Virus record (IMG/VR): IMGVR_UViG_3300044796_000657
Coordinates: 1-64,000 of that record
Direction: 5' to 3' (one strand)
DNA: 64,000 nt
Shown: positions 39,990 through 63,513 of the stretch, piece by piece
Numbering within the stretch: the first letter of the stretch is position 1
Layout of the letters: each line of letters opens with the position of its first letter
Position numbers and translations under genes: made by a program
The notes under the pieces: generated by a model
What the model was told of the DNA's origin: nothing
Seen by the model: only the letters and a program-made list of their open reading frames with translations
Databases searched by the model: none

Positions 39990-39992
39990 CGT

Positions 39993-42928: not shown

Positions 42929-43281
42929 ACAAAACTCCTGAAAGAAAAAAGGGTGAAAAACGTTCCCGACATAAAGGATGATAGCATCCAATACCGTCAG
43001 GTCAAGACTCAAACTAACAATTTTCGGGAAATTCCGATTTTATTGTGTCGCATGAGTCCGGGGATTTGATTTCCCCTTACAACCAACCCGCTGTATGGTC
43101 ACCATCATCGGGTCAGTCATTGTTTCAACACTAGCCACCCTGTATGGTCACTTCTCTCTTAAGATTGCGGCCAAACATTAACTTCCTTCAATGTACACTT
43201 TGAAACGCATTAACAGTGTATGGTCACGGCTAAAACTAGGCCAAATAAAAAACCCCGCCAAATAGCGGGGTGTACACTTCA

Positions 43282-43497
43282 CTATTTCCCGAACCCTTCC
43301 ATCCATTGTATTAGATGAGGGTTTTTCAATTCGGACCTATCTTCATCCGTGTCGGCTTTTCCGTCTCTCACCTTCAACTCTTCAATCACTGCCAAAACGG
43401 CAGAAACAAACGCTGGCCCCGTCGCCTGCGAAAGTTCGCCCAGATCAAAAGAGACATCGGCAACATTGCCCCTATCACTCGTTATCGTCAATGTCAT
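43282..43497 (-). CDS. Cassette ORFan
   Basis: 71 aa; terminator hairpin at about 43248-43270. Confidence 0.7.
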   Translation of the reverse strand: MTLTITSDRGNVADVSFDLGELSQATGPAFVSAVLAVIEELKVRDGKADTDEDRSELKNPHLIQWMEGFGK

Positions 43498-43704
43498 AAG
43501 GCACCCTAGTTAAAGAAACAAAGCCCACCAGTGAGGCGGGCTGTATGGTCACTTCTTCTTCGACTTCTTCGGCGGCGGAGACACTCGCTCATCTTCAGAA
43601 CACGCATTGAGGAAATAGCCGGTAAACTTCGTTTCGTTGTGCCAGAATTCGCCGTCACTCGGTTGCTGCGCTGAACAGTTCGCAAAGCTCAATTCACAGT
43701 ATGG

Positions 43705-44139
43705 TCACTCCGGTATCTGTTCCTCAATCACCCATCCATTGATGTCGCCCACAACCTCAACTTGCCAGCGGTTCGGCTTGCCCTCCTTCTTATTAACTTC
43801 CGTTACCTCACGAATCTCACAACCCCGACCCTCAATGTAGGCTACTGCCGATGCCTTCGACCCGCACACTTTCACCGTTCCACTTGGGAAATGAAGAGCC
43901 ACGAACACCGGTACCTTAACACGCTCGCTCCACTCAATCCCATCACCAAACGCCTGCAGCCAATCCCACAAGGCGGCGGGCTTCAAAAGAGGGCTGATCG
44001 TCCGATGCCCCATTGCCGCACTGACCAACGAACGGCGGCGATTATTGCTATCCAACTCAAACATGAGCTGGTTGCCAGTATTGCGGTTCAAACGATCCAC
44101 AACACGCTGTAGATCATCACGACTGAAACGACGGGCCAT
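43705..44139 (-). CDS. Cassette ORFan
   Basis: CAGGAG SD; TGA stop inside a 1-mismatch site. Confidence 0.8.
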   Translation of the reverse strand: MARRFSRDDLQRVVDRLNRNTGNQLMFELDSNNRRRSLVSAAMGHRTISPLLKPAALWDWLQAFGDGIEWSERVKVPVFVALHFPSGTVKVCGSKASAVAYIEGRGCEIREVTEVNKKEGKPNRWQVEVVGDINGWVIEEQIPE

Positions 44140-44257
44140 GACTTGTCTCCTGTTTCGGGCACACTAACTGCACACACCCCTGTATGGTCACCCTAGTACC
44201 ATTAACACCCAATACTGAACAAACGTTCAGTATTGGGCACATTACCTGCACACTTGT

Positions 44258-44548
44258 TTACATTCGGAAGTTGGCAGGCTGAATGGTATAAATCCATTCA
44301 CCATCCATCAAAACTCGCCATTCCCTTTCTTCGGGGAACGGTATTACAACGATGTCTCTCTCGTTGCCCGGTTCATCCATCACACCAAGCCAGTTCCGAA
44401 TGTAAAGCTCCGCTCGCTCCACATTCGGATAAACCCCACCGTTGCCCCCATCATCATCACGCTTAATAACCACAACCATTTCAATGGCATTGGCTTCCGG
44501 CGTCATCGGATGAGAAGTCGGCACATTCAACGTGATTTGAGCGTTCAT
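44258..44548 (-). CDS. Cassette ORFan
   Basis: AAGGAG SD + ATG 44548. Confidence 0.75.
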   Translation of the reverse strand: MNAQITLNVPTSHPMTPEANAIEMVVVIKRDDDGGNGGVYPNVERAELYIRNWLGVMDEPGNERDIVVIPFPEEREWRVLMDGEWIYTIQPANFRM

Positions 44549-44582
44549 CAGTGATCTCCTTAGTACCACAACGCCTGTATGG

Positions 44583-44936
44583 TCACAGTTGGGCCAAAAC
44601 CAAAGCATCTGACCACATGTTGGGCTTCTTTGTCTCAATCTCTTCCATCCAACCCAAAACAACTATCAAATCAGCCGAACGTGTTAACAAACGCCAACGC
44701 CAAGGAATCGGCCCAGATTCATCAACCTCATCACCCGGCATCGCAACCGCATACTTGCCAGATTCCGTCTGCACAATCACGGGACGTAAACTGCTATGGT
44801 TGAGAAGGGTTTTCAAATCTTTCAATGACTCCAATCCCATGCTCGCTAAATCCTTGTCGTCGGCTTTCATTCGCATCCGACAACCATTAAGACAATCATG
44901 AATACGAGCTAAACATTTTTTGATAGCAGGACTCAT
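44583..44936 (-). CDS. Cassette ORFan
   Basis: TGA stop inside the site. Confidence 0.75.
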   Translation of the reverse strand: MSPAIKKCLARIHDCLNGCRMRMKADDKDLASMGLESLKDLKTLLNHSSLRPVIVQTESGKYAVAMPGDEVDESGPIPWRWRLLTRSADLIVVLGWMEEIETKKPNMWSDALVLAQL

Positions 44937-45108
44937 GTTAAACATCCCCCGGCACACTTGCTGCACACTTAGTACGCCCCTAAGCCCGCTTCCCATAGAG
45001 TTTCCTCATAGGGGCGGGCTATCGGGCTAACAACGACAAACAATCCTCTAGGCTGCGCAACCAAAAGGCATTTTTGCCAACCACAAGGGAATTTTATTAT
45101 GTGGCCTT

Positions 45109-45369
45109 TCACCCCGTCGCTTGCTCCCCATGACGCAATGATTGCTCATCACGCCCCGTAATCCTCATCATGCTCTGAATGACATTATCAGGAACTTCCG
45201 ATCCCGATACCTCAATGAACGCCGCCTCTTTCTTCGGCTGGTAAAACCAACGAACACCATCAAACGCAAACTCCCGCATCTGATTCAAGAAATTGTAGCC
45301 CGTAATGACTTCACCAGTCACACTGCCTACATCATCCTTGAACTTAACCAAAAAGCGAGTCTTTGCCAT
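45109..45369 (-). CDS. Hypothetical protein
   Basis: AAGGGG SD. Confidence 0.75.
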   Translation of the reverse strand: MAKTRFLVKFKDDVGSVTGEVITGYNFLNQMREFAFDGVRWFYQPKKEAAFIEVSGSEVPDNVIQSMMRITGRDEQSLRHGEQATG

Positions 45370-45542
45370 GATCGTGTCCCCTTAAGAACAATACTTCAAA
45401 AGATGCCGCCACTTGTAAGGCAAGAAAGCCTTCGGCAAATAAGGCTCCCTCATCTTGAAACTCGCCAAACCACGACGAATTCCCGGCTCTACTCTGTATG
45501 TCAAGTGATGTCCCCCTGATAACCACAAGGCTGTATGGTCAC

Positions 45543-45782
45543 TCAGCCCCAAGCATACATCAAACATTCTGACCAATACGTTTGAACAATCCCCTTGATC
45601 TTAGACGCCTTCACCTTCCGCAATTCTTCCACCGACACTTCCAAAATGCCACGGGACGTATCACGCCGCAAACTCACATACTCCTGCGGGCGATAACCCA
45701 AAAGGCTATAAACCTTATCACGCCCTCGATGAGAACCACACTTAACCAGATATTTGCCATCCTTCTCATAAATGCGGGCCAT
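45543..45782 (-). CDS. Cassette ORFan
   Basis: TGA directly abuts the site. Confidence 0.75.
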   Translation of the reverse strand: MARIYEKDGKYLVKCGSHRGRDKVYSLLGYRPQEYVSLRRDTSRGILEVSVEELRKVKASKIKGIVQTYWSECLMYAWG

Positions 45783-45897
45783 GACATTAACCTTGTGTAT
45801 TAGGCGAGAGAAACTACCACTACCGCCACGATTAGATAGCTACTTCGGCTATTAGTCCCTCTCGCCACCAATAACCCTGTATGGTCACCACGCCCCT

Positions 45898-45983
45898 GTG
45901 ACCATACACGCCATGAAAGAAACGGACTAAATGAACTACCACTCCCCACCAATTTGACGACTATTCATAGGATGTATGGTCAC
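45898..45983. repeat. Inverted-pair element copy 4 (86 bp)
   Basis: GTGACCATACA-N5-TGAAAGAAACGG ... GACTATTCA-TAGGA-TGTATGGTCAC. Confidence 0.85.
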
Positions 45984-47377
45984 AACGGGAAAGGTCACGA
46001 AGAAACCCCACGGAGAATCTCGTCTCCGTGGGGTCAACTTGCCGGTGATCGGGCAAAAATAATCAGGACACGGTGGTGAAGCGTTTCATGTTCATTCTCC
46101 TCTTGGCTATGCCCCCGAACTTGGGGCGGGTTTCAGGAAACGGGGAAAGTCTGGGTGATGTTCACAGGTTCGGTATCAGATGCCCATCAGCCTGTATGGT
46201 CACTCGTCTTGGTGTCTACCGGGCCGTTAGTGAGGAGGATCAACTCTGTCATTGGCAACTAGCACGCAGGCGACGATATTGGCGGTCGGCGGCGGCAAGT
46301 ATCAGTTAACCCTCGGAAGCGGCGTTGTCGTCATGGTTGCCGCTGTGATCGGGCCGGTTTTCGGTATCAGGCTAATGGGCATCCTCTGGAAAAAAAGAAG
46401 GAACAAAGCTACGGGAATGGGTTTGGTTTTTTCATGGCGTGGTCTTTCATATAGGTATGGCCCCGGCTTTTGACGCTGCCCACTCAGCACCTAGACACCG
46501 AAAGGGTATCATTAAGGGCCATTTACGGGTGTGGGACATGAGCGACACTAGCCAAAAACAGAACTTCTCGGCAACATGTTATTCTCCGCCGTTGAGGGTG
46601 TTGGGCGTTTCAAATGGGCCGGGATACTACTTCTCGCCTACCTAAGCGGCTCGTTTGTGTCCGGTCAGGCCCGAAGCGAGTTTTTACAATCTAGTCCCGG
46701 TCAGCACGGATGCCTATGCTAATGGAATACCAACCATTAGCACCTTGGCTCCGATGTCTGTTTAGGGAAATCCCGATGTGAACATCGTAGCACCATCCTT
46801 TCATTAGGTTTATACAATTCCGGGCTGCTTAACCATCCTGAATGTTCCCGACGACCCGTGAGGGCTATCTATCTCACGGCACTTACGCACGCCGGGAACT
46901 ACCCAAGATACTACCACGTACTCTTTGGCCTGTCAAGACCATTCTTCACAATTATCACGGTGTATGGTCACTCGCTGAACATCCGTATATCTTCGCTCTC
47001 TTGGCCGTTAACATCCACAACGTGACCATACAGAAAACTTGGCGTTCAACCCTTAGAGATCCATCAGGATTCCAGCCCTTTTTCATACTTTTCATTTTCA
47101 GTGGTGGGCTTGGAATTGACTGCATTGGCCTTTGAAATGGTTTCCGGTGGCAAAATGGTGGGGCGTGCGTTAGAATGTCAGACAGTAGACAAGAGGGGGC
47201 TAGTACCAACCCATAGAGACCCCCTTGACTTTCCCCGTCAATCCCCTACCATATCCTTTATGTACAATACAGTGGTATGCTCTTTAACGGCTTTTTCCTG
47301 TTAAATGGCACTTTGGGCTTGTCTAGGCTTTGGCATTCTGTACGATAGTCTTATGGTGTTAGTGGTGGGGGTTCGGT

Positions 47378-47572
47378 TCAGGCTAATGGGCATCCTCTGG
47401 CTGCGAGTATTAGGAAGGAGGTGATGATGATTAGGCCGACGAGGTGTCTTAGGTAGTTTGGCACTGTGTTTGCTGGTATTGTGCAAACGATAGTGAAGCA
47501 GGCGATCATTGCGATTGCTGCTAGGATTGTGATAGGGTTTTGGCGTATGATGGCCCAGAGTGTATTTTTCAT
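47378..47572 (-). CDS. Small two-TM membrane protein
   Basis: LWAIIRQNPITI...; two hydrophobic segments. Confidence 0.6.
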   Translation of the reverse strand: MKNTLWAIIRQNPITILAAIAMIACFTIVCTIPANTVPNYLRHLVGLIIITSFLILAARGCPLA

Positions 47573-47763
47573 TTTAATTTCTTGACTAGCCATATGAGGC
47601 ATAGGACTGAGAGGATTGTGAGTATGATTGATGCTGGTATTTTGTAGGGGTTGTGGAGTCTGTTAATGGTGACCATGTGTAGGATGAGGGTGACCCATAG
47701 CACGATGAGTGGTGATTTGGCGAAGGCTCTTGTGAGCATCCAGAGTCTAGTTCTTGTGTTCAT
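47569..47763 (-). CDS. Small two-TM membrane protein
   Basis: LWMLTRAFAKSPLIV... Confidence 0.6.
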   Translation of the reverse strand: MNTRTRLWMLTRAFAKSPLIVLWVTLILHMVTINRLHNPYKIPASIILTILSVLCLIWLVKKLK

Positions 47764-47803
47764 TTTCGGCACACTACATGCACAGTTGGCGTGGTGTTGG
47801 GTT

Positions 47804-47983
47804 TTAGCGGATTGTTGCGAGTGTGCCTTCTGCGTTTCTGAGTGTGATGCTGTAGTATCCTTTTGCTGTTGCTTTGAGCCACATTCTTCGGACATGGTTT
47901 TCGTTGCCGGATACAAGTGTAAATCCGGTGCCGTTCATTTCTTCTGCCATTCCGTAGTGGGCGATGATTTGGAACACGTTCAT
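47804..47983 (-). CDS. Hypothetical protein
   Basis: MNVFQIIAHYG...; 59 aa. Confidence 0.6.
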   Translation of the reverse strand: MNVFQIIAHYGMAEEMNGTGFTLVSGNENHVRRMWLKATAKGYYSITLRNAEGTLATIR

Positions 47984-47988
47984 TCTCT

Positions 47989-48213
47989 TTATTTGGTTCG
48001 TTTGGTTTGGTGTATGATTGTGATGATTAGGGTGATTATGCAGAGTGTAGCGATGCACACTGTGGTTATCCGTTGTCTTTCTGTGTATGGCAGTGGTATG
48101 TTAAGCATTGGTTGTAGTGCTAGGAATGACAGGACGAAGTAAGTAGCTGGTTGTTTGAGTGCAAGGTGTGCGAGTAGCCATAGGATGTTTTTGGGTGTAG
48201 GTTTGTATGGCAT
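47989..48213 (-). CDS. Small two-TM membrane protein
   Basis: LWLLAHLALKQPATY...; preceded by motif 2. Confidence 0.65.
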   Translation of the reverse strand: MPYKPTPKNILWLLAHLALKQPATYFVLSFLALQPMLNIPLPYTERQRITTVCIATLCIITLIITIIHQTKRTK

Positions 48214-48255
48214 TTGGTATGTCCTGTATGTTTTGGCACACTAGCTGCACACTTG

Positions 48256-48465
48256 TTAGGCTTTTTTGAGGTTGGCTTCGAGTTTTGCCATTTCGGCGGC
48301 GTGGTGTTTGCCTTGTTTGACACGGGCGTCTGCTATTGTGTGTGCGAGTTCTTTGGCGGCATCGACTTCATCGGGTTTGAGTTCCCCTCGTAGTGCCCGG
48401 TTGACCATGTTAAGTTCATCGGTGGCGAGAACCAGTTGGTATGTCATAAACATGTCAAGTCTCAT
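48256..48465 (-). CDS. Hypothetical protein
   Basis: AAGGA SD. Confidence 0.75.
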   Translation of the reverse strand: MRLDMFMTYQLVLATDELNMVNRALRGELKPDEVDAAKELAHTIADARVKQGKHHAAEMAKLEANLKKA

Positions 48466-48482
48466 TGTATTATTCCTTTTTG

Positions 48483-48893
48483 TTAGTCGTACCATGCTCT
48501 GAGGCAAGTTTCTGTGGATTCGTATTCGTCGGCATTCTTGAACATTGTCTTGAATGCTTTTTGGAGTTTTGGTGAGGCTTTTCCTTGGAGTGATATTTGT
48601 GAGATAGTGATACGGAAGTCGGGTCTTTCTTCCGTAACGACGTATCCATCGCCTTGTAGTTCCGGGTATTCTTCCATGAACTTAACTATTTCGGCGATTG
48701 TGGGGCCGTTGTTTTGTGATTCTTCGGGGTCTAGGAAACCTCTTTCAATGAGCAGTTTGATTGCGTTGAGTTTGAGGCCGTCGAACAGTGCGATACCTCC
48801 TCCGTATTGTGGCGTATCTCTTTGTGTTTCTTCGTGGTTCCATTTGACGCCGTTGGCGGTCATGAGTTCATCACGTTTGGCTTGTCTTTGCAT
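48483..48893 (-). CDS. Hypothetical protein
   Basis: AAGGA SD; ends ...RAWYD. Confidence 0.8.
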   Translation of the reverse strand: MQRQAKRDELMTANGVKWNHEETQRDTPQYGGGIALFDGLKLNAIKLLIERGFLDPEESQNNGPTIAEIVKFMEEYPELQGDGYVVTEERPDFRITISQISLQGKASPKLQKAFKTMFKNADEYESTETCLRAWYD

Positions 48894-48901
48894 TGTATTC
48901 C

Positions 48902-49159
48902 TTAGTGTTTGTAGCGGCTGTAGCTTTGTTGAACGTCTATGTGGATTTTTATTGCGATGTAGATTGCGTAGCTTGTGAAGGTGATTAGTCCCAAGCAAAG
49001 GATCAAGCCTGCTAGTGCTGAGATTTCGTTGGCGGTCTTTTTGGCTTTGGAGAGTTTGGTTATTGCTGCTGTGGTTAGCAGTGTGATGAAACCTATCACT
49101 GTGATAGTGAGTGTCAGGATGAGGTTATTGAGCAGTGTGTTAACTTCGTAGGATGTCAT
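48902..49159 (-). CDS. Two-TM membrane protein
   Basis: Two hydrophobic segments. Confidence 0.7.
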   Translation of the reverse strand: MTSYEVNTLLNNLILTLTITVIGFITLLTTAAITKLSKAKKTANEISALAGLILCLGLITFTSYAIYIAIKIHIDVQQSYSRYKH

Positions 49160-49214
49160 TGTTGTTCTCGTTTGAGGGTTTTGGGGAATTTCCCTTTATG
49201 TTAAGGGTGTATGG

Positions 49215-49457
49215 TCACTGTGATTTGTAGGTTGCTTGTCCTACGTTAAATCCTTTGGCGAAGCCTTCGAGTTTGTGGTTGATTTCCTTGATTTGTTCGG
49301 GTGTGAGTTCGTTGAGTGAGAGAAATGCGATTGCGTATCCCTCTTTGAAGTGTGCGGTGAAGTGTGCACCGCTACTTCTGAATGTTTCGGTGGCGAATTC
49401 GATGAGTGCGTTGGCTTGATTGTAATTCAAGCCTTTGAGTGTGGTTTGGTAATTCAC
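49215..49457 (-). CDS. Cassette ORFan
   Basis: GGAGAG SD + GTG; TGA stop inside the site. Confidence 0.75.
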   Translation of the reverse strand: MNYQTTLKGLNYNQANALIEFATETFRSSGAHFTAHFKEGYAIAFLSLNELTPEQIKEINHKLEGFAKGFNVGQATYKSQ

Positions 49458-49972
49458 AGTCTCTCCTTTACGCAGATGCAGGTGAAGGTATGTCCCTTGT
49501 GGGAATCGTCGATGGTTTTTTGGAAGATTTCTTCTGCCCATTCATCGATATTGTGTTGGTGGACTGTTGTGATATTAACGTATTTCCCTCTGTGGGTTGG
49601 TCGGTTGTCCATTGAGCTGGACTGGTATCGTACGATGATACTTGTGGGATCTTGGAATTTGTCTACGGTTTGGATGATTTTGGATTTTCTGAGGGCTTGG
49701 GCGAGGAGTTCGGGTGAGGATTGGTATTGTAGTTCTTCTGCCCAACCGCCGATAGCGAGCATGAAACCGAAGGCGTGGATGTGGATTTTGAGTTGTAGGA
49801 TGTTTTCGTAGGGGATTGTTTCCTTGTTAATTTTGATGGTTTGTTTGTTGTCGGAGTTTTGTTTGAGTTTGCCTTTGTAGGTTCTGTTGTCTTTTGTTGT
49901 GAGGGTGACGAGGTGTCCTGTCAGCTTTGTGGCATCTTGATCGTTGAACGGGATTTTGGCGAAGTTTTGCAT
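49454..49972 (-). CDS. Cassette ORFan with N-terminal Sm/RimP-like beta segment
   Basis: GHLVTLTT..NRTYKGKL...IPYENI; GGGGA SD. Confidence 0.75.
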   Translation of the reverse strand: MQNFAKIPFNDQDATKLTGHLVTLTTKDNRTYKGKLKQNSDNKQTIKINKETIPYENILQLKIHIHAFGFMLAIGGWAEELQYQSSPELLAQALRKSKIIQTVDKFQDPTSIIVRYQSSSMDNRPTHRGKYVNITTVHQHNIDEWAEEIFQKTIDDSHKGHTFTCICVKERL

Positions 49973-50004
49973 GGTTGTTTCCCCTTTATTTTAAGGGTGT
50001 ATGG

Positions 50005-50271
50005 TCACTTGATTTCTTGGATGTGGAAAGGTTTGACTGTGGCGACGAGTCTTGTGCCGATGCCTAGTGTATCTCTCATGATTTGTGCGGCTTCTCCGAG
50101 TGGTCCGCTACTTGTTTTGAGCATGGTGTCGAGTAGTTTGGCACGGTCGGCGCATTTCTGTTTGGCTTTGGGGTCTTTATCGGGATTTGGGAATACGCAA
50201 ACGTCTTGAGTTTGTCGGTATTGTCCGTTTCCGATGGCGTAGGTGATGATAACGCAGCAGTAGGATTCCAT
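50005..50271 (-). CDS. Cassette ORFan
   Basis: AAGGA SD; TGA stop inside the site. Confidence 0.75.
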   Translation of the reverse strand: MESYCCVIITYAIGNGQYRQTQDVCVFPNPDKDPKAKQKCADRAKLLDTMLKTSSGPLGEAAQIMRDTLGIGTRLVATVKPFHIQEIK

Positions 50272-50315
50272 TGGTATTTTCCTTAGTGCCTCTTGGTAAC
50301 CATGAGGGTGTATGG

Positions 50316-50621
50316 TCACCGTCTAGCTCGGTAGAAGTGTGTTGTGTGGCTTGCTTTGGGGCCGAGCTGGTATCCCAACTGGAAAAATTCGTGGTGATCG
50401 GCGGGTGTGCTGGTGTAGCCTATGGAGGGCTTGTATTTCCAATAGAAGCCGGGTTGTGATTCTATGTGTATCTTAACGATTTCAATGAGGTTTTCGGTTT
50501 TATCCTTGTGGTCGATCATTATGAGTGTATCGCCCGGTTTCAGGATACTGAGTTTGATGATACGTCGTTGTTTGCGGTATCCGTTTGTGGGGCGTCCGAG
50601 TTCATAGGTTCTGTTTGCCAT
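50316..50621 (-). CDS. Cassette ORFan, paralog of 51683-51979
   Basis: RTY..GR.T.GYRK...L..GDTLIMIDH..KTENLIE; TGA stop inside the site. Confidence 0.8.
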   Translation of the reverse strand: MANRTYELGRPTNGYRKQRRIIKLSILKPGDTLIMIDHKDKTENLIEIVKIHIESQPGFYWKYKPSIGYTSTPADHHEFFQLGYQLGPKASHTTHFYRARR

Positions 50622-50835
50622 TGTTAACCTTTGATGAATTTGTCTTCGGTGATTGAGCAATCGTGCCAGCCGAAGGAATCCAACCAGAGATAGTGTCCCG
50701 GTTGTTTGGGGTCTTCGGTGATTGTTCGTTTGCCTAAGTGTGGCAGTGTGATTGTCATTTGGTTCTCCTTGAAAGTAGGTGGTTTAGGTCTGCCGTATCC
50801 TTGCTTTTATGGTTTTCTTTGACACCGCAACCCGG

Positions 50836-51240
50836 TTAACCGTACTCTGCCATATTAGCGGCTATTAGATTGTTGTGTGCTTCGGCGAGGCATTGGCAGG
50901 TTCCGCATTCGGATGTAGGCAGGATGGGTGCGTCGAGTTTGTTTTTGTCGTCAAATTGTTTGCCTGCTTTGGCTTGACGGATTTCGTTTTCCGTGTATTC
51001 CGCTGTACATCCGCAGGGGCAGAATTGGACGGTGTATCGTTCTTCGGTGAGTTGGATGATGCATTCGTTGAAGAGTTCGTCGTCTCCTACTTTGGTTCGT
51101 CCAGTAGTGACTTTGTGGATTTTGCCGTGGTAGGAGTGTTGTAGGCCGCTGTCTCTGGTGATGACGGTAGCGGTTTGTCCTTCGAATTTGTCGGCGGTTT
51201 CGAAGGTGAAGGGGTCGGTGAGCGAGTAGTAGTGTCGCAT
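50836..51240 (-). CDS. Hypothetical protein with Cys motifs
   Basis: GAGG SD; CPCGC and CGTCQC. Confidence 0.75.
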   Translation of the reverse strand: MRHYYSLTDPFTFETADKFEGQTATVITRDSGLQHSYHGKIHKVTTGRTKVGDDELFNECIIQLTEERYTVQFCPCGCTAEYTENEIRQAKAGKQFDDKNKLDAPILPTSECGTCQCLAEAHNNLIAANMAEYG

Positions 51241-51418
51241 TGTTAACCTCGTAGTTTGGCGATGGCGGTTGGGGCGATGGCAATGAGCAGCAGGACGATC
51301 ATGAGTACGAACACCATACTCATCCAAAAGACGACCTTAAGTTCCTCTTGGACTCTTTTGAGTTGGGATTGTAGGGCTTCGATTTCGGCTTTTTGTGCTG
51401 CTAGTTCTTCTTGAATGG

Positions 51419-51649
51419 TCATTGGATTCCTGCCAGTTGGTTAATGAGTTCGTCGGCGTCGGTGTTTGTATCGTGGCAGAACTTAGCGAAGTCGGCTTCG
51501 AAGTTTGTGGCGAAGAATTCTATTTGGTGACTGCCGCCTTGACCAGAGTTGTAGACTTCGGCAACGGGGGTGTCATTGAGTGTGAGGATTGCTCCGAGAG
51601 TGTAGGAGTATTCGCCCTTTTGTTTCTCTGCGTGTTGGAGTTTATACAT
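51419..51649 (-). CDS. Hypothetical protein
   Basis: 76 aa. Confidence 0.7.
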   Translation of the reverse strand: MYKLQHAEKQKGEYSYTLGAILTLNDTPVAEVYNSGQGGSHQIEFFATNFEADFAKFCHDTNTDADELINQLAGIQ

Positions 51650-51682
51650 GGCTTAAGTTCGTTTGGTGAAGGTTCCTAGATC

Positions 51683-51979
51683 CTAGTAAGCCATTGCTTT
51701 GTGGAAGTAGGTGTTTTTGTTAAGGTCGTTGGCCCAAGTGAACGATTCTTGGTTCAGGCCGGGGCAGGGTGTGTTGTGTTTGTCTTGTTTGTATTTCCAT
51801 GCGAATCCTTTGGATGGGGATTCTCGAAGTTCGGTGACTTCGATGAGGTTTTCGGTTTTGCCGTCGTGGTCAATCATGATGAGGGTATCGCCCACTTGGA
51901 GCAATTTCATCTTGGTGACCCGTTTGGTTTTGCGGTATCCGGCTGTGGAACGTCCAGCATCGTAGGTTCGCTTGGCCAT
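51683..51979 (-). CDS. Cassette ORFan, paralog of 50316-50621
   Basis: GGGGA SD; same conserved blocks. Confidence 0.8.
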   Translation of the reverse strand: MAKRTYDAGRSTAGYRKTKRVTKMKLLQVGDTLIMIDHDGKTENLIEVTELRESPSKGFAWKYKQDKHNTPCPGLNQESFTWANDLNKNTYFHKAMAY

Positions 51980-52164
51980 TTTGTTTCCCCTGTGTTAACA
52001 ATAAGGGTGTATGGTCACTGGAATGTGATGGTGTAGTATTCGTCCGTATATTTGCCGTTTTGTTGTGCGGAGGACTTCGGCTTGTTTATTTGAATCGAAC
52101 ATTTTGGTTAGGTCTGGGGCATTGTGGTAGCCGAGAACTTTGTGGTTGAAAATTTGGAACATAG

Positions 52165-53307: not shown

Positions 53308-56300
53308 TTAATTTGCAACCTCAACTTCGAGGGCTTTGATGAGGTTAGCAATCTCCTCTTCAAGTTTTTCGGTGCCGATCTTCGCCCATAGCCATCCATT
53401 GGCCGTAGCGATGAAGTGTACATCTTGTTCGTTGTTGTCACCGTAGAACTTCGCTTCACGGATTTTGGCTATGATACTGCCAATGTCACCAGTATCCCAT
53501 TTTCGGCGATGAGCGAACGTGCGGAGGAAGTTTTCGTATGCGAAGCCGATTTCTTCTGCAGACTTGGTAGAGCTGCACACATTCGCATTATCGCTTGTGG
53601 TAATGGTGGGCGTAGTGTCTTTAATGGAGAAGTCAGAGAAGTTAACATTCTTCCACCAAAAACAACCGACGACCGGACCGCTTGCCATAGTGAATGAGCC
53701 ATCAATCGATGAAGCGTAGCAAAAGATTTGCTGTCCTTTATAACGAATTTGTGTGTGGTGATTCTTAAGGCCATCAATGAGGAATCTGATTTGCTCGTCG
53801 GAGATATTTATCTTCGGTATGAATGCGAAGTCTTCGTATTTGGTACTATTCCAATAAATGGGCGTATTCGCATCGGTGCTGTAAAAGAAAAGTCCGGACA
53901 TACTCGTCACTTCTTGGTTTTTGTAAAGCACTTTGCCCTCAAATGCCTTGATATACTTAATTTGGTTTTCAAGAACTTGTACTCCAACCTTGAAGTAAAT
54001 GACGGGATGGGTGGTTTGCCAATCAATGTTAACATCACCCTCTTTCACCTCGAAATTATCAAGGTAGCATTCTTTCCAGTTGAAGCAATTCATAATTGCT
54101 GCGTCAGCCAAATCCTTATTGTATGCACTGTTGATTGGGTGAGGATAGCCATTGGTGAATTGCCAAACTTTCACCTTATCATCATTTGTGTATGTGACTC
54201 GGTAGTGTTTATGAGCGGCAAATAGTTTGAGTTTTTCCACTTGTGCCATCGTGACGACGATTCTTGGCCAAATGTAATCTTCAATTCTCGTTTCTTTGAC
54301 ATTCACAATGGTGTGATACTTGTCATCGGCAACGGTGATCGTCATGTGTTGAATGAGCGACTGTTTTGAGTCTCCCACATTGCGGAGCATCGCCGTCACT
54401 TGTTTGCCTTGGTACTTAACGGTGCACACATTCGCCTTGAAGAGCTTCTGTGCAAATTCTTCCGTCATGTTGAATGACTTTTGTGTCGCTTTCTTCTCCT
54501 CTTCGATTGTGAAGTCTTCGATGTTAGCTTCACTGATTAGGATTTCTTTTCGTGGTGATTCAAAGCCGTAGTAATATGTCACTTGGGACATAACTTCGCC
54601 CTTGCCTTTATTGAAACCGGTAAGACCGATGCCCTTGTACTTAACCTCCTTGTGATCCCAATGAGCATCAAATATTTGTTTGGCGAGTGCTTCTGTCATA
54701 TTGGTGGCTTTTGCGGTTTGCCAATCAATGTTAACGCCGTCTTTGACGACTTTGAATTGTTCAGTATAGCACGATTCCCAATTCCAATGATCTTTTGCAA
54801 GATCCATGAAAGATGTTCCCGAAGGAAATTGTGTTTTATTACTTCTGTATCCATTTCCTAGTGAATAGATCGTTACCGTTCCCTGAATATTATAAGAAAC
54901 TTGGTATGCCTTATTGGCGGCAAACAGCTTGATTTTTTCGATTTGCTCCGGTGTTATTCTCGTTAACGCTTTGAGTTCGTAATCTTCAATGTTGGTATTG
55001 TGGATCAAAGTGTGTTTACCGGCGAACACAAATCCTACCCCTTTCCCTCTCACAACTTCCAAGTCCCCATTCAATCCGATAAAGTGAGAAATTATATTAC
55101 CTTGATACTTGGGATACTCAGAGTTTCGACATGCCAACGCAACCTTGTTGGCAAATTCATCGGTCATGTTATAAGTCGGTTCGGGTAAAGTGTTAAGCCA
55201 ATCAAGCCAATCAATGTTAACACCATCCTTCGTTACCTTGAAGTTGTCCACATAACAGCCACTCCAACCCCAAGACGTTTTAGCAAGATCGATGTGGGTG
55301 TGCACAGAAGCCCGTTTGAATCCACTGGTCAAAAAGTAAGGAGCTGAGGCGAGAGTATTTCCCATTTGGGGATTTGTATACGTAACTTCGTAAACCTTAT
55401 TGGCAGCAAGCAATCTGATTTTTGTGATTTGCTCTGCGGTGACGACTTCCCCCACGGCTGGCATCGTGTAATCTTCGATGTTAGTGTATCTGACTTCAAT
55501 AGCATCGCCCACATCGACTGTGTTAATTAACATCTCCATAACCGTTCCTTGCGGTCTGAGGGCACAAATGCGTTTGCCTTTGTATAACATCTCACATTTG
55601 GTGAATATCTTATGGATACGTGAAGCAAATTCTTCAGTCATGGTGTAAGTCGGTTCAAAGATTTCATAATCTTCCATATTGGTATAGAGAATTGAAATGG
55701 GACTATATTGCTTGCCGACCAACACAAATTCCGTCGCCTCAATAACACTCAAATTATTGCTCAATCCAGCGAAATAAGCAATTTGCTCATTTTTGTATCT
55801 TGGACACTTCATATTTCGACATGCAAATATAATTTTATTTGCGAATTCATCGGTCATGTTGTAAGTCGGTTCGGGTTCGGTGTTGAGCCAATCAATGACA
55901 ACACCATCCTTTGTAACTTTGAAATTGTCCACATAAGAAATTTTCCAATCCCAAGTTGTTTTTGCTATATCGATGTGGTTGTTCAAAGATTCACGTTTGA
56001 ATCCATTGGTCACAAAGTGAGGGACAGTAGGGAGCTTGTTGCTCACTTGAGGATTTGTATATGTGACTTCATACACCCTATTGGCAGCAAACAATTTGAT
56101 TTTTGCGATTTGTTCTAACGAGACAAGTAAACCTTCTGGCATAGTATAATCTTCGATGTTGGTATATTTGACTTGGACAAAGTCAGCAACGCCGACTGTG
56201 TTAATTTGTATCTTTTCCATAACTGTGTCGCTGGCCTTGCCCAACAGACTGACACCACAAATGCGTTTGCCCTTGTATAGCATATTGCATTTGGTGAATG

Positions 56301-59094
56301 TGTCGTTGATACGTAAAGCGAATTCTTCGGTCATGGTGTGAGAGGGCTGCACAGTGAAGTCTTTATTCTTCACAGCAAGCCAACGCAGGGTGATGATCCT
56401 TTTGTCTTTGTCTTCAAAAGCAAAATCATCCACATTGTTAGCAGATTTGATGCGGTAGCCTTTGTAGTTCGCTTGCCAATTGGGCTTGTTGTAGACATAA
56501 TCAATAATTTCGGTGATTTGTGCTGGACTTGGATGCGGTTCAACTGCCACGACATAGTCTTTTTGATGAATATCTAACATGAATTCGTTGGTCATGTTGT
56601 CAATGTTAACATCAAGCCAATTGGGGATATTGACGCCATCCTTGGATACTGTGAAGTTGGTGACTCTGCTGGCGTGCCAATCCCAATTTGTTTTGATGGG
56701 CTTCTTGGTTTTTAGGTCAACGCTACCGTGTTCAGAAATTTCATAATGATGATCTTCAATGAATTGATAGCGTTTGGGAGGAGAGATTGCACGCCCCAAA
56801 TCAACAGTGTATGTGACTTTGTATGCTTTATTGGCGGCAAAGGCCAAGACCTTATAGGCTTGTGGCATGGTCATTCTATACAATAATAAGTTTTGATTTT
56901 CCCAATTAAGTTTCTCACCATTAGTGGTAGTCACATCAAATTTGTCAACGAAAGCCGCCGACCAATTGAACTCTTCTTTGTTGGCAAGATCGGTTGTATT
57001 TTCAGATTCGGCTAACTTGTAACCATTAGTCAGCGACCAAATCACACCCTTAAGTTTATTTGTGTATGTGACTTTGTATTGTTTGTGAGCTGCAAACCAT
57101 TTGATGACGGCAACTTGTTCGGCTGTGCAGAGTTTGGAAGCATCAGGCACTACGACTGACTTGGGTGTAATGATGAAATCCTTTATGTTATGATCAACAA
57201 ACGACTTAGCTTGTTGCTCAAAGCTCATGTAAAAGAGCCACTTTCCAGCTTCCTCCTTATTGGCGGTAATGATGTACTCCCCGATAGAAATGACACAAAC
57301 CTTGCAAGTAGTCACGTAGTGTTGATGAATGTTTGTTCCTGTGACGAGAGCCGTTTCTTTGTATTTGACCGTATCCCCTTTTTCGAGGGCTGCGTAGATC
57401 GATGTGATGAATTCGTTACGCATGTTGGGCGTTATCACGAAATCATTCATGTCAATCTCATTGAAGAATATCGCAGCAGACCGTGTTGTGATGTAGAAAT
57501 GTGATTCGTAGGCGCCGTCGGTGTAAATACTTGCGACAAGGTTGTTTGCACCTTGATAACTTACCACCTGCTTGTTCTTGATAGCAGCTTTGAGGCTTTC
57601 AGGGGTGTGGATAGATTTTGCGAAATGTTGAGGTGCGTGCTTTGGCGTATCGCTTTCAGAGGTGGGTTTTGCGAAATCACTTACATCAACATCCTTGAAG
57701 AAATATCTGCTTTTCATTACATCAAAGTGATAATTGCCCCAAGGATGATAAATCCCCAAATCAGCAATCTGAACGGGCAGAGTCGCAACTCCGACGATTC
57801 GACTGCGTTTGTATTGTGTGATTTCATTTTTGCTGATTTTCAGAATGAGATCCTTCAATTCGGTTTGTCGTTGCGTGAAGACATTCTTGTCTGTCACAAT
57901 GACATCTTTTTCATTTATTGTGGTACAGCATGTCCACTTGCCGTCTATGACGAAAAATGGCTTTCCGTCTTCTTCTGATATATTGTTAACTAAAACGCCC
58001 TTATAGGTGATTATGGACTGTTCAGCAGTTGGTTGAGCTTGAAATTGTTTGTAAAGTTTGACTGACCAATGTTCTTGTAGTGTGAAATCATTTATGTCAA
58101 CATCGCTAAAGAACGTAGCAATGTGTTGACTTGCGTGCTTTGGCGTATCATGAAAGAATGGCTGTCTATCATCGAGATAAATGCTGTATACAGTTTTGTC
58201 TTTGTATTTGATGATATGAGTTTCCAAAGCCTTTTTGAGACTTGCTGGAGTATGTCCTGATTTGTTTTCTGTGATCGTGAAATCCTTCATGTTAACATCG
58301 TTGAAAAACAACGTATACATTTCACTTCTGTAACCGAAAAACGAATTGCCATTACCCGGAATGGTAATGCTGGCAACGGGTCTGCCCTTGTATTGAACAA
58401 GGTGGTTGCCTTCCATTGCCGCCTTGAGGCCTTCAGGAGTGTGCGTGGATTGTTGTGGTAATGGGCGTTCTGTCCATTCAAAATCTCTGTATTGCTTGTT
58501 TGTCCATTCAATCCAACGACCGCCACATTGGAAACTATTGACACCTGCTCCCGTGACTTCTACGCCTAGATAAGTCGTCTTCCAAGTCGTGTACTTCTCG
58601 GATACGAATTTGATGATGTTGTCGATTTGTAATCCGGTTATGCATGGCGGATTAGAGAAGTCAACATAGTTAACATTCGCCCAATGATACGTGGTTTGAT
58701 TATCGCACGAAAATCTGTCATCGTCACTGTTATCATCATCGCTATTGATTTGGGAGATACGTTGTTTCTTATAAAACACTTCGCTGCCCGATTTGAAGCG
58801 GGCAATGATTTCAGCAATTTGCTCTTTGGTCATAGGTGGTTGGCCATTGACCCAGTCGATGGGTTGATCTTTTTTATCAAACACGGCGAAATGAGAAATT
58901 GATTGTCCAACACCAGCTTGGTGACCACCAGAACTGGAAGGGTATGATGAAATATAAAAAGTACCTATTTGATTTGCGTTGGCATTTCGTTTAAAACGAA
59001 GAACGGTTGAGCCACGAAAGAAAACTTTGTATTTGGAACTACTGCAGAAGTCGTAAAGTTTGTTGAAGAGAGCAAGCGTGATGATGTTGGACAC
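53308..59094 (-). CDS. Large tandem-module repeat protein (~1928 aa)
   Basis: AAGGA SD + GTG 59094; repeated MT(E/D)EFA..YKG..IEDY and FAANK.Y.VTYTN..W.W..VD.F.V.KDGVNIDW units. Confidence 0.9.
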   Translation of the reverse strand: MSNIITLALFNKLYDFCSSSKYKVFFRGSTVLRFKRNANANQIGTFYISSYPSSSGGHQAGVGQSISHFAVFDKKDQPIDWVNGQPPMTKEQIAEIIARFKSGSEVFYKKQRISQINSDDDNSDDDRFSCDNQTTYHWANVNYVDFSNPPCITGLQIDNIIKFVSEKYTTWKTTYLGVEVTGAGVNSFQCGGRWIEWTNKQYRDFEWTERPLPQQSTHTPEGLKAAMEGNHLVQYKGRPVASITIPGNGNSFFGYRSEMYTLFFNDVNMKDFTITENKSGHTPASLKKALETHIIKYKDKTVYSIYLDDRQPFFHDTPKHASQHIATFFSDVDINDFTLQEHWSVKLYKQFQAQPTAEQSIITYKGVLVNNISEEDGKPFFVIDGKWTCCTTINEKDVIVTDKNVFTQRQTELKDLILKISKNEITQYKRSRIVGVATLPVQIADLGIYHPWGNYHFDVMKSRYFFKDVDVSDFAKPTSESDTPKHAPQHFAKSIHTPESLKAAIKNKQVVSYQGANNLVASIYTDGAYESHFYITTRSAAIFFNEIDMNDFVITPNMRNEFITSIYAALEKGDTVKYKETALVTGTNIHQHYVTTCKVCVISIGEYIITANKEEAGKWLFYMSFEQQAKSFVDHNIKDFIITPKSVVVPDASKLCTAEQVAVIKWFAAHKQYKVTYTNKLKGVIWSLTNGYKLAESENTTDLANKEEFNWSAAFVDKFDVTTTNGEKLNWENQNLLLYRMTMPQAYKVLAFAANKAYKVTYTVDLGRAISPPKRYQFIEDHHYEISEHGSVDLKTKKPIKTNWDWHASRVTNFTVSKDGVNIPNWLDVNIDNMTNEFMLDIHQKDYVVAVEPHPSPAQITEIIDYVYNKPNWQANYKGYRIKSANNVDDFAFEDKDKRIITLRWLAVKNKDFTVQPSHTMTEEFALRINDTFTKCNMLYKGKRICGVSLLGKASDTVMEKIQINTVGVADFVQVKYTNIEDYTMPEGLLVSLEQIAKIKLFAANRVYEVTYTNPQVSNKLPTVPHFVTNGFKRESLNNHIDIAKTTWDWKISYVDNFKVTKDGVVIDWLNTEPEPTYNMTDEFANKIIFACRNMKCPRYKNEQIAYFAGLSNNLSVIEATEFVLVGKQYSPISILYTNMEDYEIFEPTYTMTEEFASRIHKIFTKCEMLYKGKRICALRPQGTVMEMLINTVDVGDAIEVRYTNIEDYTMPAVGEVVTAEQITKIRLLAANKVYEVTYTNPQMGNTLASAPYFLTSGFKRASVHTHIDLAKTSWGWSGCYVDNFKVTKDGVNIDWLDWLNTLPEPTYNMTDEFANKVALACRNSEYPKYQGNIISHFIGLNGDLEVVRGKGVGFVFAGKHTLIHNTNIEDYELKALTRITPEQIEKIKLFAANKAYQVSYNIQGTVTIYSLGNGYRSNKTQFPSGTSFMDLAKDHWNWESCYTEQFKVVKDGVNIDWQTAKATNMTEALAKQIFDAHWDHKEVKYKGIGLTGFNKGKGEVMSQVTYYYGFESPRKEILISEANIEDFTIEEEKKATQKSFNMTEEFAQKLFKANVCTVKYQGKQVTAMLRNVGDSKQSLIQHMTITVADDKYHTIVNVKETRIEDYIWPRIVVTMAQVEKLKLFAAHKHYRVTYTNDDKVKVWQFTNGYPHPINSAYNKDLADAAIMNCFNWKECYLDNFEVKEGDVNIDWQTTHPVIYFKVGVQVLENQIKYIKAFEGKVLYKNQEVTSMSGLFFYSTDANTPIYWNSTKYEDFAFIPKINISDEQIRFLIDGLKNHHTQIRYKGQQIFCYASSIDGSFTMASGPVVGCFWWKNVNFSDFSIKDTTPTITTSDNANVCSSTKSAEEIGFAYENFLRTFAHRRKWDTGDIGSIIAKIREAKFYGDNNEQDVHFIATANGWLWAKIGTEKLEEEIANLIKALEVEVAN

Positions 59095-59322
59095 GGTAGA
59101 TTCCTTGTGGATGTTAACGGTAGATTGTGGATGTCGCCAACCAATGTAACAGGGAAGATCCATTGGCATGACTGGTTCTCAAAATATAAGGAGGTCTTGG
59201 ATGGAACAGAAAAAGAAGCCACCTCGCATGAAAACCATAAAGCGGTTCCCCGATGGATACGCTTTACATTCGTGGGTTTCTTCCGTCAGTATGTCATAGT
59301 AAATGGCGTTCATGGCAATCCT

Positions 59323-63165: not shown

Positions 63166-63513
63166 TCATATCATGGGATCAAAGGCAAGGAAAGTGTTAA
63201 ACTTAGGCCATTGTAAATGAGTTGCTAAGTCTTTGTTTTTATTGGCCCACTTGGTATTACAAGCGTAACAAGCCATAACAGTGTTAGGTCGTTCTATAAA
63301 AAGTTCTATATCATCAAATAGAACCCAAACACCATCAAGTGCCCCACCCTTACTAACAGGTCGTATATGTTCAACTGTTGCCATATAATCAGGAAATTGT
63401 ATCCCTTGAGGCTGCGGTTGCGGCAACTCCGTTAAACCAAAACACCAGAAGCATGTTCCCATTTGCTTGAAGAACAAATTATCCAATACCTCTCGCTTTC
63501 TCTTGCTTCCCAC
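63166..63513 (-). CDS. HNH endonuclease
   Basis: CFWC...ATVEHIRPVSKGG...N.V.AC..CN; TGA abuts the site. Confidence 0.85.
   Translation of the reverse strand: MGSKRKREVLDNLFFKQMGTCFWCFGLTELPQPQPQGIQFPDYMATVEHIRPVSKGGALDGVWVLFDDIELFIERPNTVMACYACNTKWANKNKDLATHLQWPKFNTFLAFDPMI

What the first reader, a model, noticed from the sequence alone, without database searches (positions are those of the whole stretch)
53308..59094. ~1930-aa beads-on-a-string protein built from two module types
Seen: roughly 17 type-A units (short helix such as HTPESLKAA or MT(E/D)EFA, then YKG/YQG, ending DF or IEDY) and 6 type-B units (EQIxKIKLFAANKxYxVTYTN...NG...DLAK..W.W..YVDNFKVTKDGVNIDW). An A-B-A block is duplicated at high identity (about 55650-56350 and 54980-55650). 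There is no signal peptide, TM segment or catalytic motif, and the gene is AT-rich. Inference: a single-chain counterpart of the MNLNK array, i.e. a polyvalent protein of small diversified domains.
Basis: partly seen in the sequence, partly recalled or inferred. Interest (0 to 1): 0.62.

Follow-up and report, generated by a model that had tools for sequence, protein, structure and literature searches.

The report
Orphan giant phage protein of 24 small barrels
The largest gene of a huge peat-soil phage encodes a 221-kDa chain of about 24 small domains with no relative among about 15 billion public proteins; the commoner domain type is predicted to be a helix-capped small beta-barrel, a fold that usually serves for binding, and what it binds is unknown.

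Summary
Window 53308-59169 (minus strand) is one ORF of 1,953 codons. The likely start is the GTG at 59094, giving 1,928 aa. The protein holds 17 type-A modules, 6 type-B modules, one divergent N-terminal module and one truncated fragment. Short linkers join them, and a unique 104-aa C-terminal domain ends the chain. An A-B-A triplet is duplicated (63% aa, 73% nt identity). Paralogous modules show dN/dS of 0.17-0.55. The gene is present at 100% identity in a peat metatranscriptome library.

Pfam, PHROGs, PDB sequences and a profile search of 1.84 billion cluster representatives find only the protein itself. AlphaFold2 models an A module (pLDDT 86) as an N-terminal helix plus a five-stranded small beta-barrel. 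Structural matches are weak (Z up to 4.7) and point to Sm/Hfq, WYL, Tudor and SH3-like barrels. No tail-fibre or other known structural repeat matches.

A and B share only a helix-strand motif, so common ancestry is unproven. No sequence link to the MNLNK gene array was found. The best reading is a non-enzymatic multivalent binding scaffold, probably intracellular. A virion fibre or decoration protein is the main rival. The function is inferred, not shown.

The parts
53308..59169 (-). Full ORF, 1,953 codons plus stop. The likely real start is the GTG at 59094 (1,928 aa, 221 kDa, pI 6.6).
58849..59082 (-). Module 1 (aa 30-107), divergent. It starts A-like and ends with a B-like 'KDQPIDW' tail.
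   Evidence: A-only HMM 11.0 bits, reached by 0 of 500 shuffles; leave-one-out 17.6 bits
58654..58833 (-). Module 2, type A (aa 113-172)
58474..58644 (-). Module 3, type A, weak (aa 176-232)
   Evidence: leave-one-out 9.5 bits against a shuffle maximum of 6.6
58273..58443 (-). Module 4, type A, 'HTPE' subtype (aa 243-299)
58078..58254 (-). Module 5, type A, 'HTPE' subtype (aa 306-364)
57880..58068 (-). Module 6, type A, weak (aa 368-430)
   Evidence: leave-one-out 12.1 bits against a shuffle maximum of 9.0
57670..57870 (-). Module 7, type A (aa 434-500)
57433..57609 (-). Module 8, type A, 'HTPE' subtype (aa 521-579). A 20-aa linker precedes it.
57169..57423 (-). Module 9, type A with a roughly 20-aa insertion (aa 583-667). 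This is the weakest module.
   Evidence: leave-one-out 9.0 bits, reached by 2 of 200 shuffles
56893..57129 (-). Module 10, type B (aa 681-759)
   Evidence: B HMM 110 bits
56608..56874 (-). Module 11, type B (aa 766-854)
   Evidence: B HMM 101 bits
56530..56607 (-). Truncated module fragment (aa 855-880): helix plus first strand only
   Evidence: read from the sequence
56350..56529 (-). Module 12, type A (aa 881-940)
56140..56334 (-). Module 13, type A, 'MTEEF' subtype (aa 946-1010). First unit of A-B-A copy 1.
55879..56124 (-). Module 14, type B (aa 1016-1097), in A-B-A copy 1
55660..55857 (-). Module 15, type A (aa 1105-1170). Last unit of A-B-A copy 1, and the module that was modelled.
   Evidence: AF2 pLDDT 85.8, pTM 0.72
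55462..55641 (-). Module 16, type A (aa 1177-1236), in A-B-A copy 2. 68% identical to module 13.
55198..55443 (-). Module 17, type B (aa 1243-1324), in A-B-A copy 2. 66% identical to module 14.
54973..55167 (-). Module 18, type A (aa 1335-1399), in A-B-A copy 2. 49-50% identical to module 15.
54712..54957 (-). Module 19, type B (aa 1405-1486)
54505..54699 (-). Module 20, type A (aa 1491-1555)
54271..54468 (-). Module 21, type A (aa 1568-1633)
54010..54255 (-). Module 22, type B (aa 1639-1720)
53821..53976 (-). Module 23, type A (aa 1732-1783)
53623..53805 (-). Module 24, type A (aa 1789-1849)
53311..53622 (-). Unique C-terminal domain (aa 1850-1953). It is not repeated, has net charge -5 and ends in an amphipathic helix.
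   Evidence: no relative in the genome, the protein database, PDB sequences or the Atlas

Best explanation
SHOWN. This is a real protein-coding gene, the largest ORF of a huge phage (a 430-kb IMG/VR record cut from a 614-kb peat metagenome contig). It encodes a soluble chain of about 221 kDa with no recognisable enzyme domain. The chain has 24 small modules (52-89 aa) joined mostly by 3-13-residue linkers that are often Pro/Thr-rich, and it ends in a unique 104-aa domain. The gene grew by serial intragenic duplication; the latest visible step copied an A-B-A triplet. The copies have since evolved under purifying selection.

PREDICTED. The A module is an N-terminal capping helix followed by a five-stranded small beta-barrel of the Sm/SH3/Tudor/WYL kind. 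Its conserved residues are the T-x-x-E helix N-cap, Y-K-G on the first strand, a Phe on the third strand and D-F on the last strand. These look like core and first-to-last-strand contacts. The loop after the second strand is the hot spot for insertions and sequence change.

INFERRED. The chain is a multivalent binding scaffold. Many weakly diverged barrels each offer a variable loop surface, so the protein binds a polymeric or repeated ligand by avidity, or gathers several ligands at once. The ligand could be nucleic acid, a host or phage protein assembly, or a polysaccharide. Small beta-barrels mostly bind RNA, ssDNA or peptides inside cells. The gene also sits in a long same-strand block of small orphan genes, and the same 64-kb window holds helicase, ParB-like and HNH-like genes. 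I therefore favour an intracellular role during infection, with the C-terminal domain as the tether or oligomerisation end.
For: Gene reality: an ORF of 1,953 codons, dN/dS of 0.17-0.55 between paralogous modules, and nine contigs at 100% identity across the gene in a peat metatranscriptome library from another study.

Repeat architecture.

No enzyme or known domain: Pfam gives 0 hits at E<=1 for the whole protein, and no family recurs over the 24 modules scanned singly. PHROGs gives 0 hits.

Fold: AF2 on a single A module gives pLDDT 85.8 and pTM 0.72, with helix 3-14 and strands at 19-20, 24-30, 43-46, 49-55 and 64-65. The best structural neighbours are all small beta-barrels: designed SH3-like barrel 7ur7 (Z 4.7, rmsd 2.2, 51 aa), DriD WYL domain (Z 4.0), Hfq (Z 4.0), PafBC and BrxR (Z 3.8-3.9), Rof (Z 3.7) and a Tudor domain. 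The Sm-like fold is described as a barrel with an N-terminal helix, and tandem barrels as scaffolds for nucleic acid or protein binding (bioRxiv 10.1101/140376).

Conserved against variable positions.

Beads on a string: the three-module model has pTM 0.45 while per-module pLDDT is about 70-85.

Context: none of the 54 other called genes within 10 kb either side has a Pfam hit on record, and nearly all are small and on the same strand. A neighbouring gene (49454-49972) has sub-threshold Sm/SH3-clan hits. Small T4 early proteins with LSm-like folds are a precedent (PMC12152347).
Against: No binding has been shown, and no ligand can be named.

The structural matches are weak. All are below Z 5, a range the tool itself says may reflect only a common arrangement, and Foldseek finds nothing at E<0.1. 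The model rests on an alignment of internal repeats only.

The B-module fold is only modelled at pLDDT 52-76 in its middle.

The protein is near-neutral: net charge -11, pI 6.6, modules between -4 and +5. That gives no support for non-specific nucleic-acid binding.

Presence in an RNA library does not prove transcription, because DNA carry-over was not controlled.

The layout of tandem small beta domains plus a unique C-terminal domain is also that of capsid-decoration proteins such as T4 Hoc (my knowledge).
Confidence: 0.4

Rival explanations
1. Virion-associated fibre or decoration protein. The unique C-terminal domain anchors the chain to the capsid or tail. The 24 barrels form a flexible filament some tens of nanometres long that sticks to host envelope or environmental polymers, comparable to Hoc-like or Ig-domain decoration but built from another fold.
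For: The architecture is tandem small beta-rich domains with short linkers plus one unique terminal domain. Virion proteins need no signal peptide or TM segment. Aromatic content is high (F+Y+W 12.6%), and B modules carry invariant Trp residues, as many carbohydrate-binding modules do (my knowledge). It is the largest ORF in the genome.
Against: No PHROG, Pfam or BFVD match to any tail-fibre, decoration, Ig-like or SH3b family. The neighbourhood is small orphan genes, and the same window holds helicase, ParB-like and HNH-like genes, not a structural module. There is no N-terminal anchor of the kind tail fibres have. The homotrimer test of the C-terminal domain gave no verdict, so it counts neither way.
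Confidence: 0.25
2. One reading: the protein is the fused, single-chain homologue of the MNLNK small-gene array (window 24.6-28.1 kb). Free-standing paralogues would have been joined into one polypeptide, or the reverse.
For: Both are amplified families of units of about 60-90 aa that open with a helix and continue with beta-strand-like sequence. Both are orphans within the same 64-kb window.
Against: hhalign of the module profile against the MNLNK profile gives probability 0.9% and E 0.061 over 15 columns. Module HMMs find no MNLNK gene, even at E<=50. The conserved motifs differ: T-x-x-E, YKG and DF against MNLNK, KVGDKV and LELD.
Confidence: 0.1
3. The array has no specific function. It would be a runaway internal duplication in a tolerated orphan gene, acting at most as an inert spacer, with the modules binding nothing in particular.
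For: There is no relative anywhere. Some modules are degenerate or truncated: aa 855-880, and weak modules 3, 6, 7 and 9.
Against: Duplicates that are old (dS 0.7 to above 2) keep an open frame over 5.8 kb, and dN/dS is 0.17-0.55. Core positions are invariant across 17 A modules (Y21, D63). The gene is unchanged in a second sample.
Confidence: 0.1

Closest known systems
Sm/LSm-like proteins (Hfq, Rof, and the T4 early proteins GoF, MotB.1 and Frd.2 with predicted LSm-like folds; PMC12152347)
   Same: An N-terminal helix followed by a five-stranded, strongly bent small beta-barrel. Hfq matches at Z 3.3-4.0 and Rof at Z 3.7. Phages are known to carry small orphan proteins of this fold, and a gene with sub-threshold Sm/SH3-clan hits lies 3.3 kb away.
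   Different: No match to the LSM or Hfq sequence models. The known Sm proteins named here have one barrel per chain, and Hfq assembles into rings. Here 24 barrels sit in one chain, and ring formation is untested.
WYL ligand-sensing domains (DriD, BrxR, CapW, PafBC)
   Same: A helix plus a small barrel of similar size, Z 3.3-4.0 over 59-61 residues.
   Different: No WYL sequence match, no attached HTH or WCX domains, and rmsd of 3-4 A.
Multi-barrel scaffold proteins (Spt5 with five KOW/Tudor domains, ribosomal protein S1 with six OB folds; bioRxiv 10.1101/140376)
   Same: Tandem small beta-barrels in one chain, used as scaffolds for binding nucleic acids or proteins.
   Different: The sequences are unrelated. 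The copy number here (24) is several times higher. It is a viral orphan with two module classes.
Phage decoration proteins and fibres made of tandem small beta domains (for example T4 Hoc; my knowledge)
   Same: A string of small beta-rich domains plus one unique terminal domain that could act as an anchor.
   Different: The predicted fold is not Ig-like. There is no family or fold match to any such protein, and the gene is not in a recognisable structural gene cluster.
Phage and conjugative-element 'polyvalent proteins' (Iyer et al. 2017; my knowledge, not read here)
   Same: A very large protein of a mobile element built from many modules.
   Different: Polyvalent proteins combine different enzymatic or effector domains. 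This protein has no recognisable enzyme domain and repeats only two module kinds.

Membership tests
Sm/LSm/Hfq superfamily | Sequence match to the Sm models (Pfam LSM, Hfq and related) | tested here: not met
   Pfam finds 0 families at E<=1 for the whole protein. No Sm-clan family appears among the 24 modules scanned singly at E<=10.
Sm/LSm/Hfq superfamily | An N-terminal helix plus a five-stranded bent antiparallel barrel | tested here: met
   This holds for the AF2 model of A module 1105-1170 (pLDDT 85.8). Hfq and Rof superpose at Z 3.3-4.0. The scores are low, so this is fold-level resemblance only.
Sm/LSm/Hfq superfamily | Ring assembly through strand pairing between neighbouring barrels | not tested
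   The three-module model shows no confident inter-module packing (pTM 0.45), but the alignment is too shallow to judge.
WYL domain | Match to the WYL sequence model, with partner HTH or WCX domains | tested here: not met
   No Pfam hit. Only fold resemblance at Z about 4.
   PHROGs gives 0 hits and Pfam 0. tblastn against 50,697 phage records gives no match. BFVD Foldseek gives nothing at E<0.1, and no fibre proteins rank high.
Polyvalent proteins of phages and conjugative elements | Several different effector or enzyme domains in one polypeptide | tested here: not met
   No catalytic or other known domain was detected. Only two repeated module kinds and one unique tail are present.
MNLNK small-protein family of the same window | Detectable sequence homology to the MNLNK profile | tested here: not met
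   hhalign gives probability 0.9%. HMM searches of all genome ORFs are negative.
MNLNK small-protein family of the same window | The same fold | not tested
One module superfamily (A and B homologous) | Reciprocal profile detection between the A and B modules | tested here: inconclusive
   hhalign gives E 3.7e-4 but probability 36%, over the first 30 columns only. The A-only HMM on B modules and the B-only HMM on A modules mostly do not exceed shuffles. An iterated HMM absorbed the B modules, which could be profile drift.

The most novel reading that the evidence does not exclude
The chain is a single-polypeptide array of Sm/WYL-like ligand-binding barrels. It would work as a high-capacity sponge or decoy inside the infected cell. 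One version soaks up host RNA, ssDNA or nucleotide-type immune signals by avidity. Another folds into stacked pseudo-rings (for example 4 x 6 barrels) that act as a covalently closed Hfq-like RNA chaperone. Either would be a new class of phage takeover or counter-defence protein, built on two domain families that have no relatives.
Probability: 0.12. Interest if true: 0.8.

Novelty: new variant of a known kind. Interest (0 to 1): 0.45.

Why it matters
Huge phages carry many orphan genes, and this is the largest gene of one of them. It is a singleton among about 15 billion predicted proteins, yet it is constrained and is present in an RNA library. Suppose the modules are ligand-binding small barrels, as the model suggests. 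Then 24 in a row would be several times more than the five or six tandem small barrels of the examples read here. It would also show how a phage can build a high-avidity binder from scratch by internal duplication. The two module families and the C-terminal domain would be new entries for domain databases. Single modules of 60-80 aa are easy targets for structure determination and binding screens.

Tried and rejected
- Whole-protein word search and tblastn and megablast against phage records: only the protein itself, or nothing.
- Profile of 24 modules against 1.84 billion representatives: apart from the protein itself, two borderline hits. P0003 (E 3.3e-4) is an Ig-like repeat protein that shares only the short hairpin motif 'DFTLTKDG'. 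P0004 (E 4.4e-4) is a BspA-type leucine-rich-repeat protein. I read both as short-motif matches summed over repeats, not homology.
- B-only profile word search, PDB sequence searches with the A, B and C-terminal queries, C-terminal domain word search, and Atlas feature searches of the C-terminal domain and a B module: nothing.
- Foldseek against PDB and BFVD and the Atlas shape search: no significant match.
- Homotrimer test of the C-terminal domain: no verdict. It is not evidence either way.
- Promoter and terminator scan: counts equal to the shuffle expectation, so uninformative.
- Common capsid, terminase and sheath Pfam models on the genome: no hits, so the structural gene cluster could not be located.
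- I first thought A and B were one family, because an iterated HMM merged them. Cross-type tests against shuffles did not bear this out, so I report it as unproven.
- A DGR-type diversification mechanism was not tested.
Full report
**1. The gene**

The window is the first 64 kb of a 430,229-bp virus record. The record has 43% GC, 38 tRNA genes and a tmRNA. IMG/VR classes it as a 'provirus' with 97% CheckV completeness. It was cut from a 614,480-bp JGI contig (3300044796, Ga0480561_0000004) of a peat metagenome.

The phage nature is supported by PHROG hits to a DNA polymerase and to a helicase and a ParB-like protein. HNH endonuclease matches are borderline. An isoleucyl-tRNA-synthetase-like ORF is also present. 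Common capsid, terminase and sheath models find nothing.

On the minus strand, one ORF runs from 59169 to 53308 (1,953 codons). It is the longest ORF in the genome. The public gene call starts at the GTG at 59094, giving 1,928 aa, and an AAGGA lies 8-12 nt upstream of it. The upstream ATG has no such site. I take 59094 as the probable start. Residue numbers below follow the 1,953-aa reading.

**2.

- A fragment-against-whole BLAST dot-plot shows dense off-diagonals from about aa 226 to 1810.
- An HMM seeded on four B units converges on exactly six B modules: aa 682-759, 767-854, 1017-1097, 1244-1324, 1406-1486 and 1640-1720, each scoring 101-120 bits.
- A-type units fall into subtypes: 'HTPE' (40-44% mutual identity), 'MTEEF/MTDEF' (22-68%) and a looser set.
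- I delimited 24 modules in all. In leave-one-out tests every module scores above all 200 composition-matched shuffles, except aa 583-667 (2 of 200), which carries a roughly 20-residue insertion.
- A truncated unit (aa 855-880) and a unique C-terminal domain (aa 1850-1953) complete the chain.
- Linkers are mostly 3-13 residues and often rich in Pro and Thr.
- At the DNA level the A-B-A triplet duplication appears as four repeat families with 681-693-nt spacing and 72-82% identity. Over the whole block it is 63% identical in protein and 73% in DNA, with dS about 0.9. So the identity is moderate, not high.

**3. One module family or two?**

An iterated A profile eventually absorbs the B modules. 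Stricter tests do not confirm this:
- hhalign of A-only against B-only profiles aligns only the first 30 columns (helix plus first strand; E 3.7e-4, probability 36%).
- HMMs built from one class mostly fail to beat shuffles on the other class.

The two classes share the T-x-E-Q-type helix start, the aromatic first strand and a (D/N)-F near the end. B adds a hairpin, 'VTKDGVNIDW'. Common ancestry is plausible but unproven. The first module (aa 30-107) is intermediate: the A-only HMM detects it (0 of 500 shuffles reach its score), and it ends in a B-like tail.

**4. It is a functional gene, not a chance frame**

- A 5.8-kb open frame is far beyond chance.
- Paralogous modules differ mainly at synonymous sites (dN/dS 0.17-0.55).
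- Tyr21 and Asp63 are invariant in all 17 A modules.
- A peat metatranscriptome library from another study holds 81% of the gene's sampled words. Nine contigs lie on the gene with no differences. The one gap coincides with the internal duplication, where short-read assembly breaks.
- This shows the same sequence in an RNA library from a second sample.

**5. No relatives**

- Pfam gives no hit at E<=1 and PHROGs none.
- No family recurs when the 24 modules are scanned singly at E<=10.
- The whole-protein word search over 5.8 billion clusters finds only the protein itself, a cluster of one member on one contig.
- A profile of all 24 modules against 1.84 billion representatives finds the protein itself (7.7e-299) and two borderline repeat proteins (E about 4e-4). 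Their matches are short motifs summed over repeats.
- B-only and C-terminal searches, PDB sequence searches and language-model look-ups are blank.
- Module HMMs find no second copy in the phage genome.
- None of the 54 other called genes within 10 kb either side has a Pfam hit on record.

**6. Fold**

With the 24 internal repeats as its alignment, AlphaFold2 models A module 1105-1170 at pLDDT 85.8 and pTM 0.72. The model has a helix at residues 3-14, strands at 19-20, 24-30, 43-46, 49-55 and 64-65, and short helical turns before the last strand.

An exhaustive structural comparison with 48,161 PDB representatives returns almost only small beta-barrels:
- a designed SH3-like barrel (7ur7: Z 4.7, rmsd 2.2 A, 51 residues);
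- WYL domains of DriD, PafBC, BrxR and CapW (Z 3.3-4.0);
- Hfq (Z 3.3-4.0) and other Sm proteins;
- the barrel lobe of papain-like proteases (Z up to 4.3);
- the Sm-like Rho inhibitor Rof (Z 3.7) and a Tudor domain.

These Z values are low, and the tool warns that such values can reflect only a common arrangement. I therefore claim the fold class, a helix-capped small beta-barrel, and not membership of any family. Foldseek finds nothing significant in PDB or BFVD. The nearest viral models are small uncharacterised phage proteins, for example A0A6J5SRS3 with query TM 0.73.

A survey of this fold notes that an N-terminal helix is typical of the Sm-like class. It also notes that tandem barrels in one chain commonly act as scaffolds for nucleic acids or proteins, for example five in Spt5 and six OB folds in S1 (bioRxiv 10.1101/140376).

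The three-module model (A-B-A, aa 946-1170) has pLDDT 71 but pTM 0.45. The modules are folded but their mutual arrangement is not fixed, and the middle of the B module is poorly modelled (pLDDT 52-61 there). The folds of B and of the C-terminal domain stay open.

**7. Conserved and variable positions**

In the A alignment the low-entropy positions are:
- the Met/Thr-x-Glu start and Ala6/Ile9 of the helix;
- Tyr21-Lys22-Gly23 and Ile26;
- Phe44;
- Asp63-Phe64.

Occupancy and conservation drop in the loop at residues 31-42, and insertions cluster after residues 23, 39, 45 and 53. In a small barrel the first and last strands pair with each other. The Y-K and D-F motifs are therefore probably neighbours that hold the barrel together; this is inference. 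So the scaffold is conserved and the loops vary.

**8. What it most likely does**

The protein has no enzyme domain, no TM segment (highest hydropathy mean 1.27) and a near-neutral charge (pI 6.6).

The best-supported reading is a multivalent binder that works by avidity through many similar but non-identical barrels. I favour an intracellular role, with total confidence about 0.4 for the combined statement, for three reasons:
- Barrels of this kind mostly bind RNA, ssDNA or peptides.
- The gene sits in a long same-strand block of small orphan genes, and the same window holds replication-type genes.
- A neighbouring gene (49454-49972) shows sub-threshold Sm/SH3-clan hits, which recalls the small LSm-like early proteins of T4 (PMC12152347).

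The main rival (0.25) is a virion fibre or decoration protein anchored by its C-terminal domain. The architecture and the aromatic-rich B modules fit that reading, but no structural family or gene context supports it. A trimer test of the C-terminal domain gave no verdict.

**9.

'A polyvalent protein of small diversified domains' is right as a description. 'Counterpart of the MNLNK array' has no sequence support: hhalign gives probability 0.9%. The MNLNK genes (window 24.6-28.1 kb) are themselves orphans.

**10. Novelty and score**

The fold class is common, and tandem barrels are known. New here are two domain families without relatives, their number in one chain (24) and the setting (the largest gene of a huge phage). 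I rate it a new variant of a known kind, with interest 0.45. It is a clean, testable orphan with a predicted binding fold, but it has no demonstrated function.

Noticed in passing
window 24632-28094 (+): An array of nine small paralogous genes that all begin MNLNK (59-150 aa; helix, then a 'KVGDKV'-type beta region, often ending LELD). The eight that were scanned have no Pfam or PHROG family above threshold. One has a faint HAS-barrel hint (E 0.02).
   Followed up: partly
window 49454-49972 (-): A 172-aa neighbour gene with sub-threshold matches to several Sm/SH3-clan families: RimP C-terminal SH3 at E 4.7e-4, LSM at 0.024, plus LSM14 and SM-ATX. It is probably an Sm-like small barrel protein, 3.3 kb downstream of the giant gene.
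   Followed up: partly
window 44000-52000: Strong strand compositional asymmetry: GC skew swings from -0.27 (44-46 kb) to +0.31 and AT skew reaches -0.39 on the plus strand, far above the rest of the window. The region holds small minus-strand orphan genes. No tandem repeat explains the skew.
   Followed up: no
window 30000-44000: An island of higher GC (49-55%, against 43% for the genome). It carries a helicase-like gene (29921-31951, phrog_1967) and a ParB-like gene (41585-43012).
   Followed up: no
window 11566-11638 and 13191-13264; genome 383-428 kb: Two tRNA genes lie in the window (Lys-UUU, Arg-UCU). The genome has 38 tRNA genes, most in a cluster at 383-428 kb, and a tmRNA at 131 kb. 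One tRNA-like gene (genome 399874-399948) is called with a four-base anticodon 'ggaa'.
   Followed up: no
genome 413227-416064 (+) = L005: A 946-aa ORF that matches phrog_12710 (530 bits). Under a weaker hit in an Acinetobacter phage record (26.6% identity) the annotation is isoleucyl-tRNA synthetase, so the phage seems to encode an aminoacyl-tRNA synthetase.
   Followed up: partly
whole record G000, and contig Ga0480561_0000004: IMG/VR labels the 430-kb record a 'provirus' cut from a 614,480-bp contig (window coordinate + 239 = contig coordinate). Standard capsid, terminase-C and sheath Pfam models find nothing in it. Whether the other 184 kb are host or phage was not examined.
   Followed up: no
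window 63166-63513 (-): A small HNH-endonuclease-like gene (Pfam HNH E 7.8e-5; weak PHROG HNH hits).
   Followed up: no
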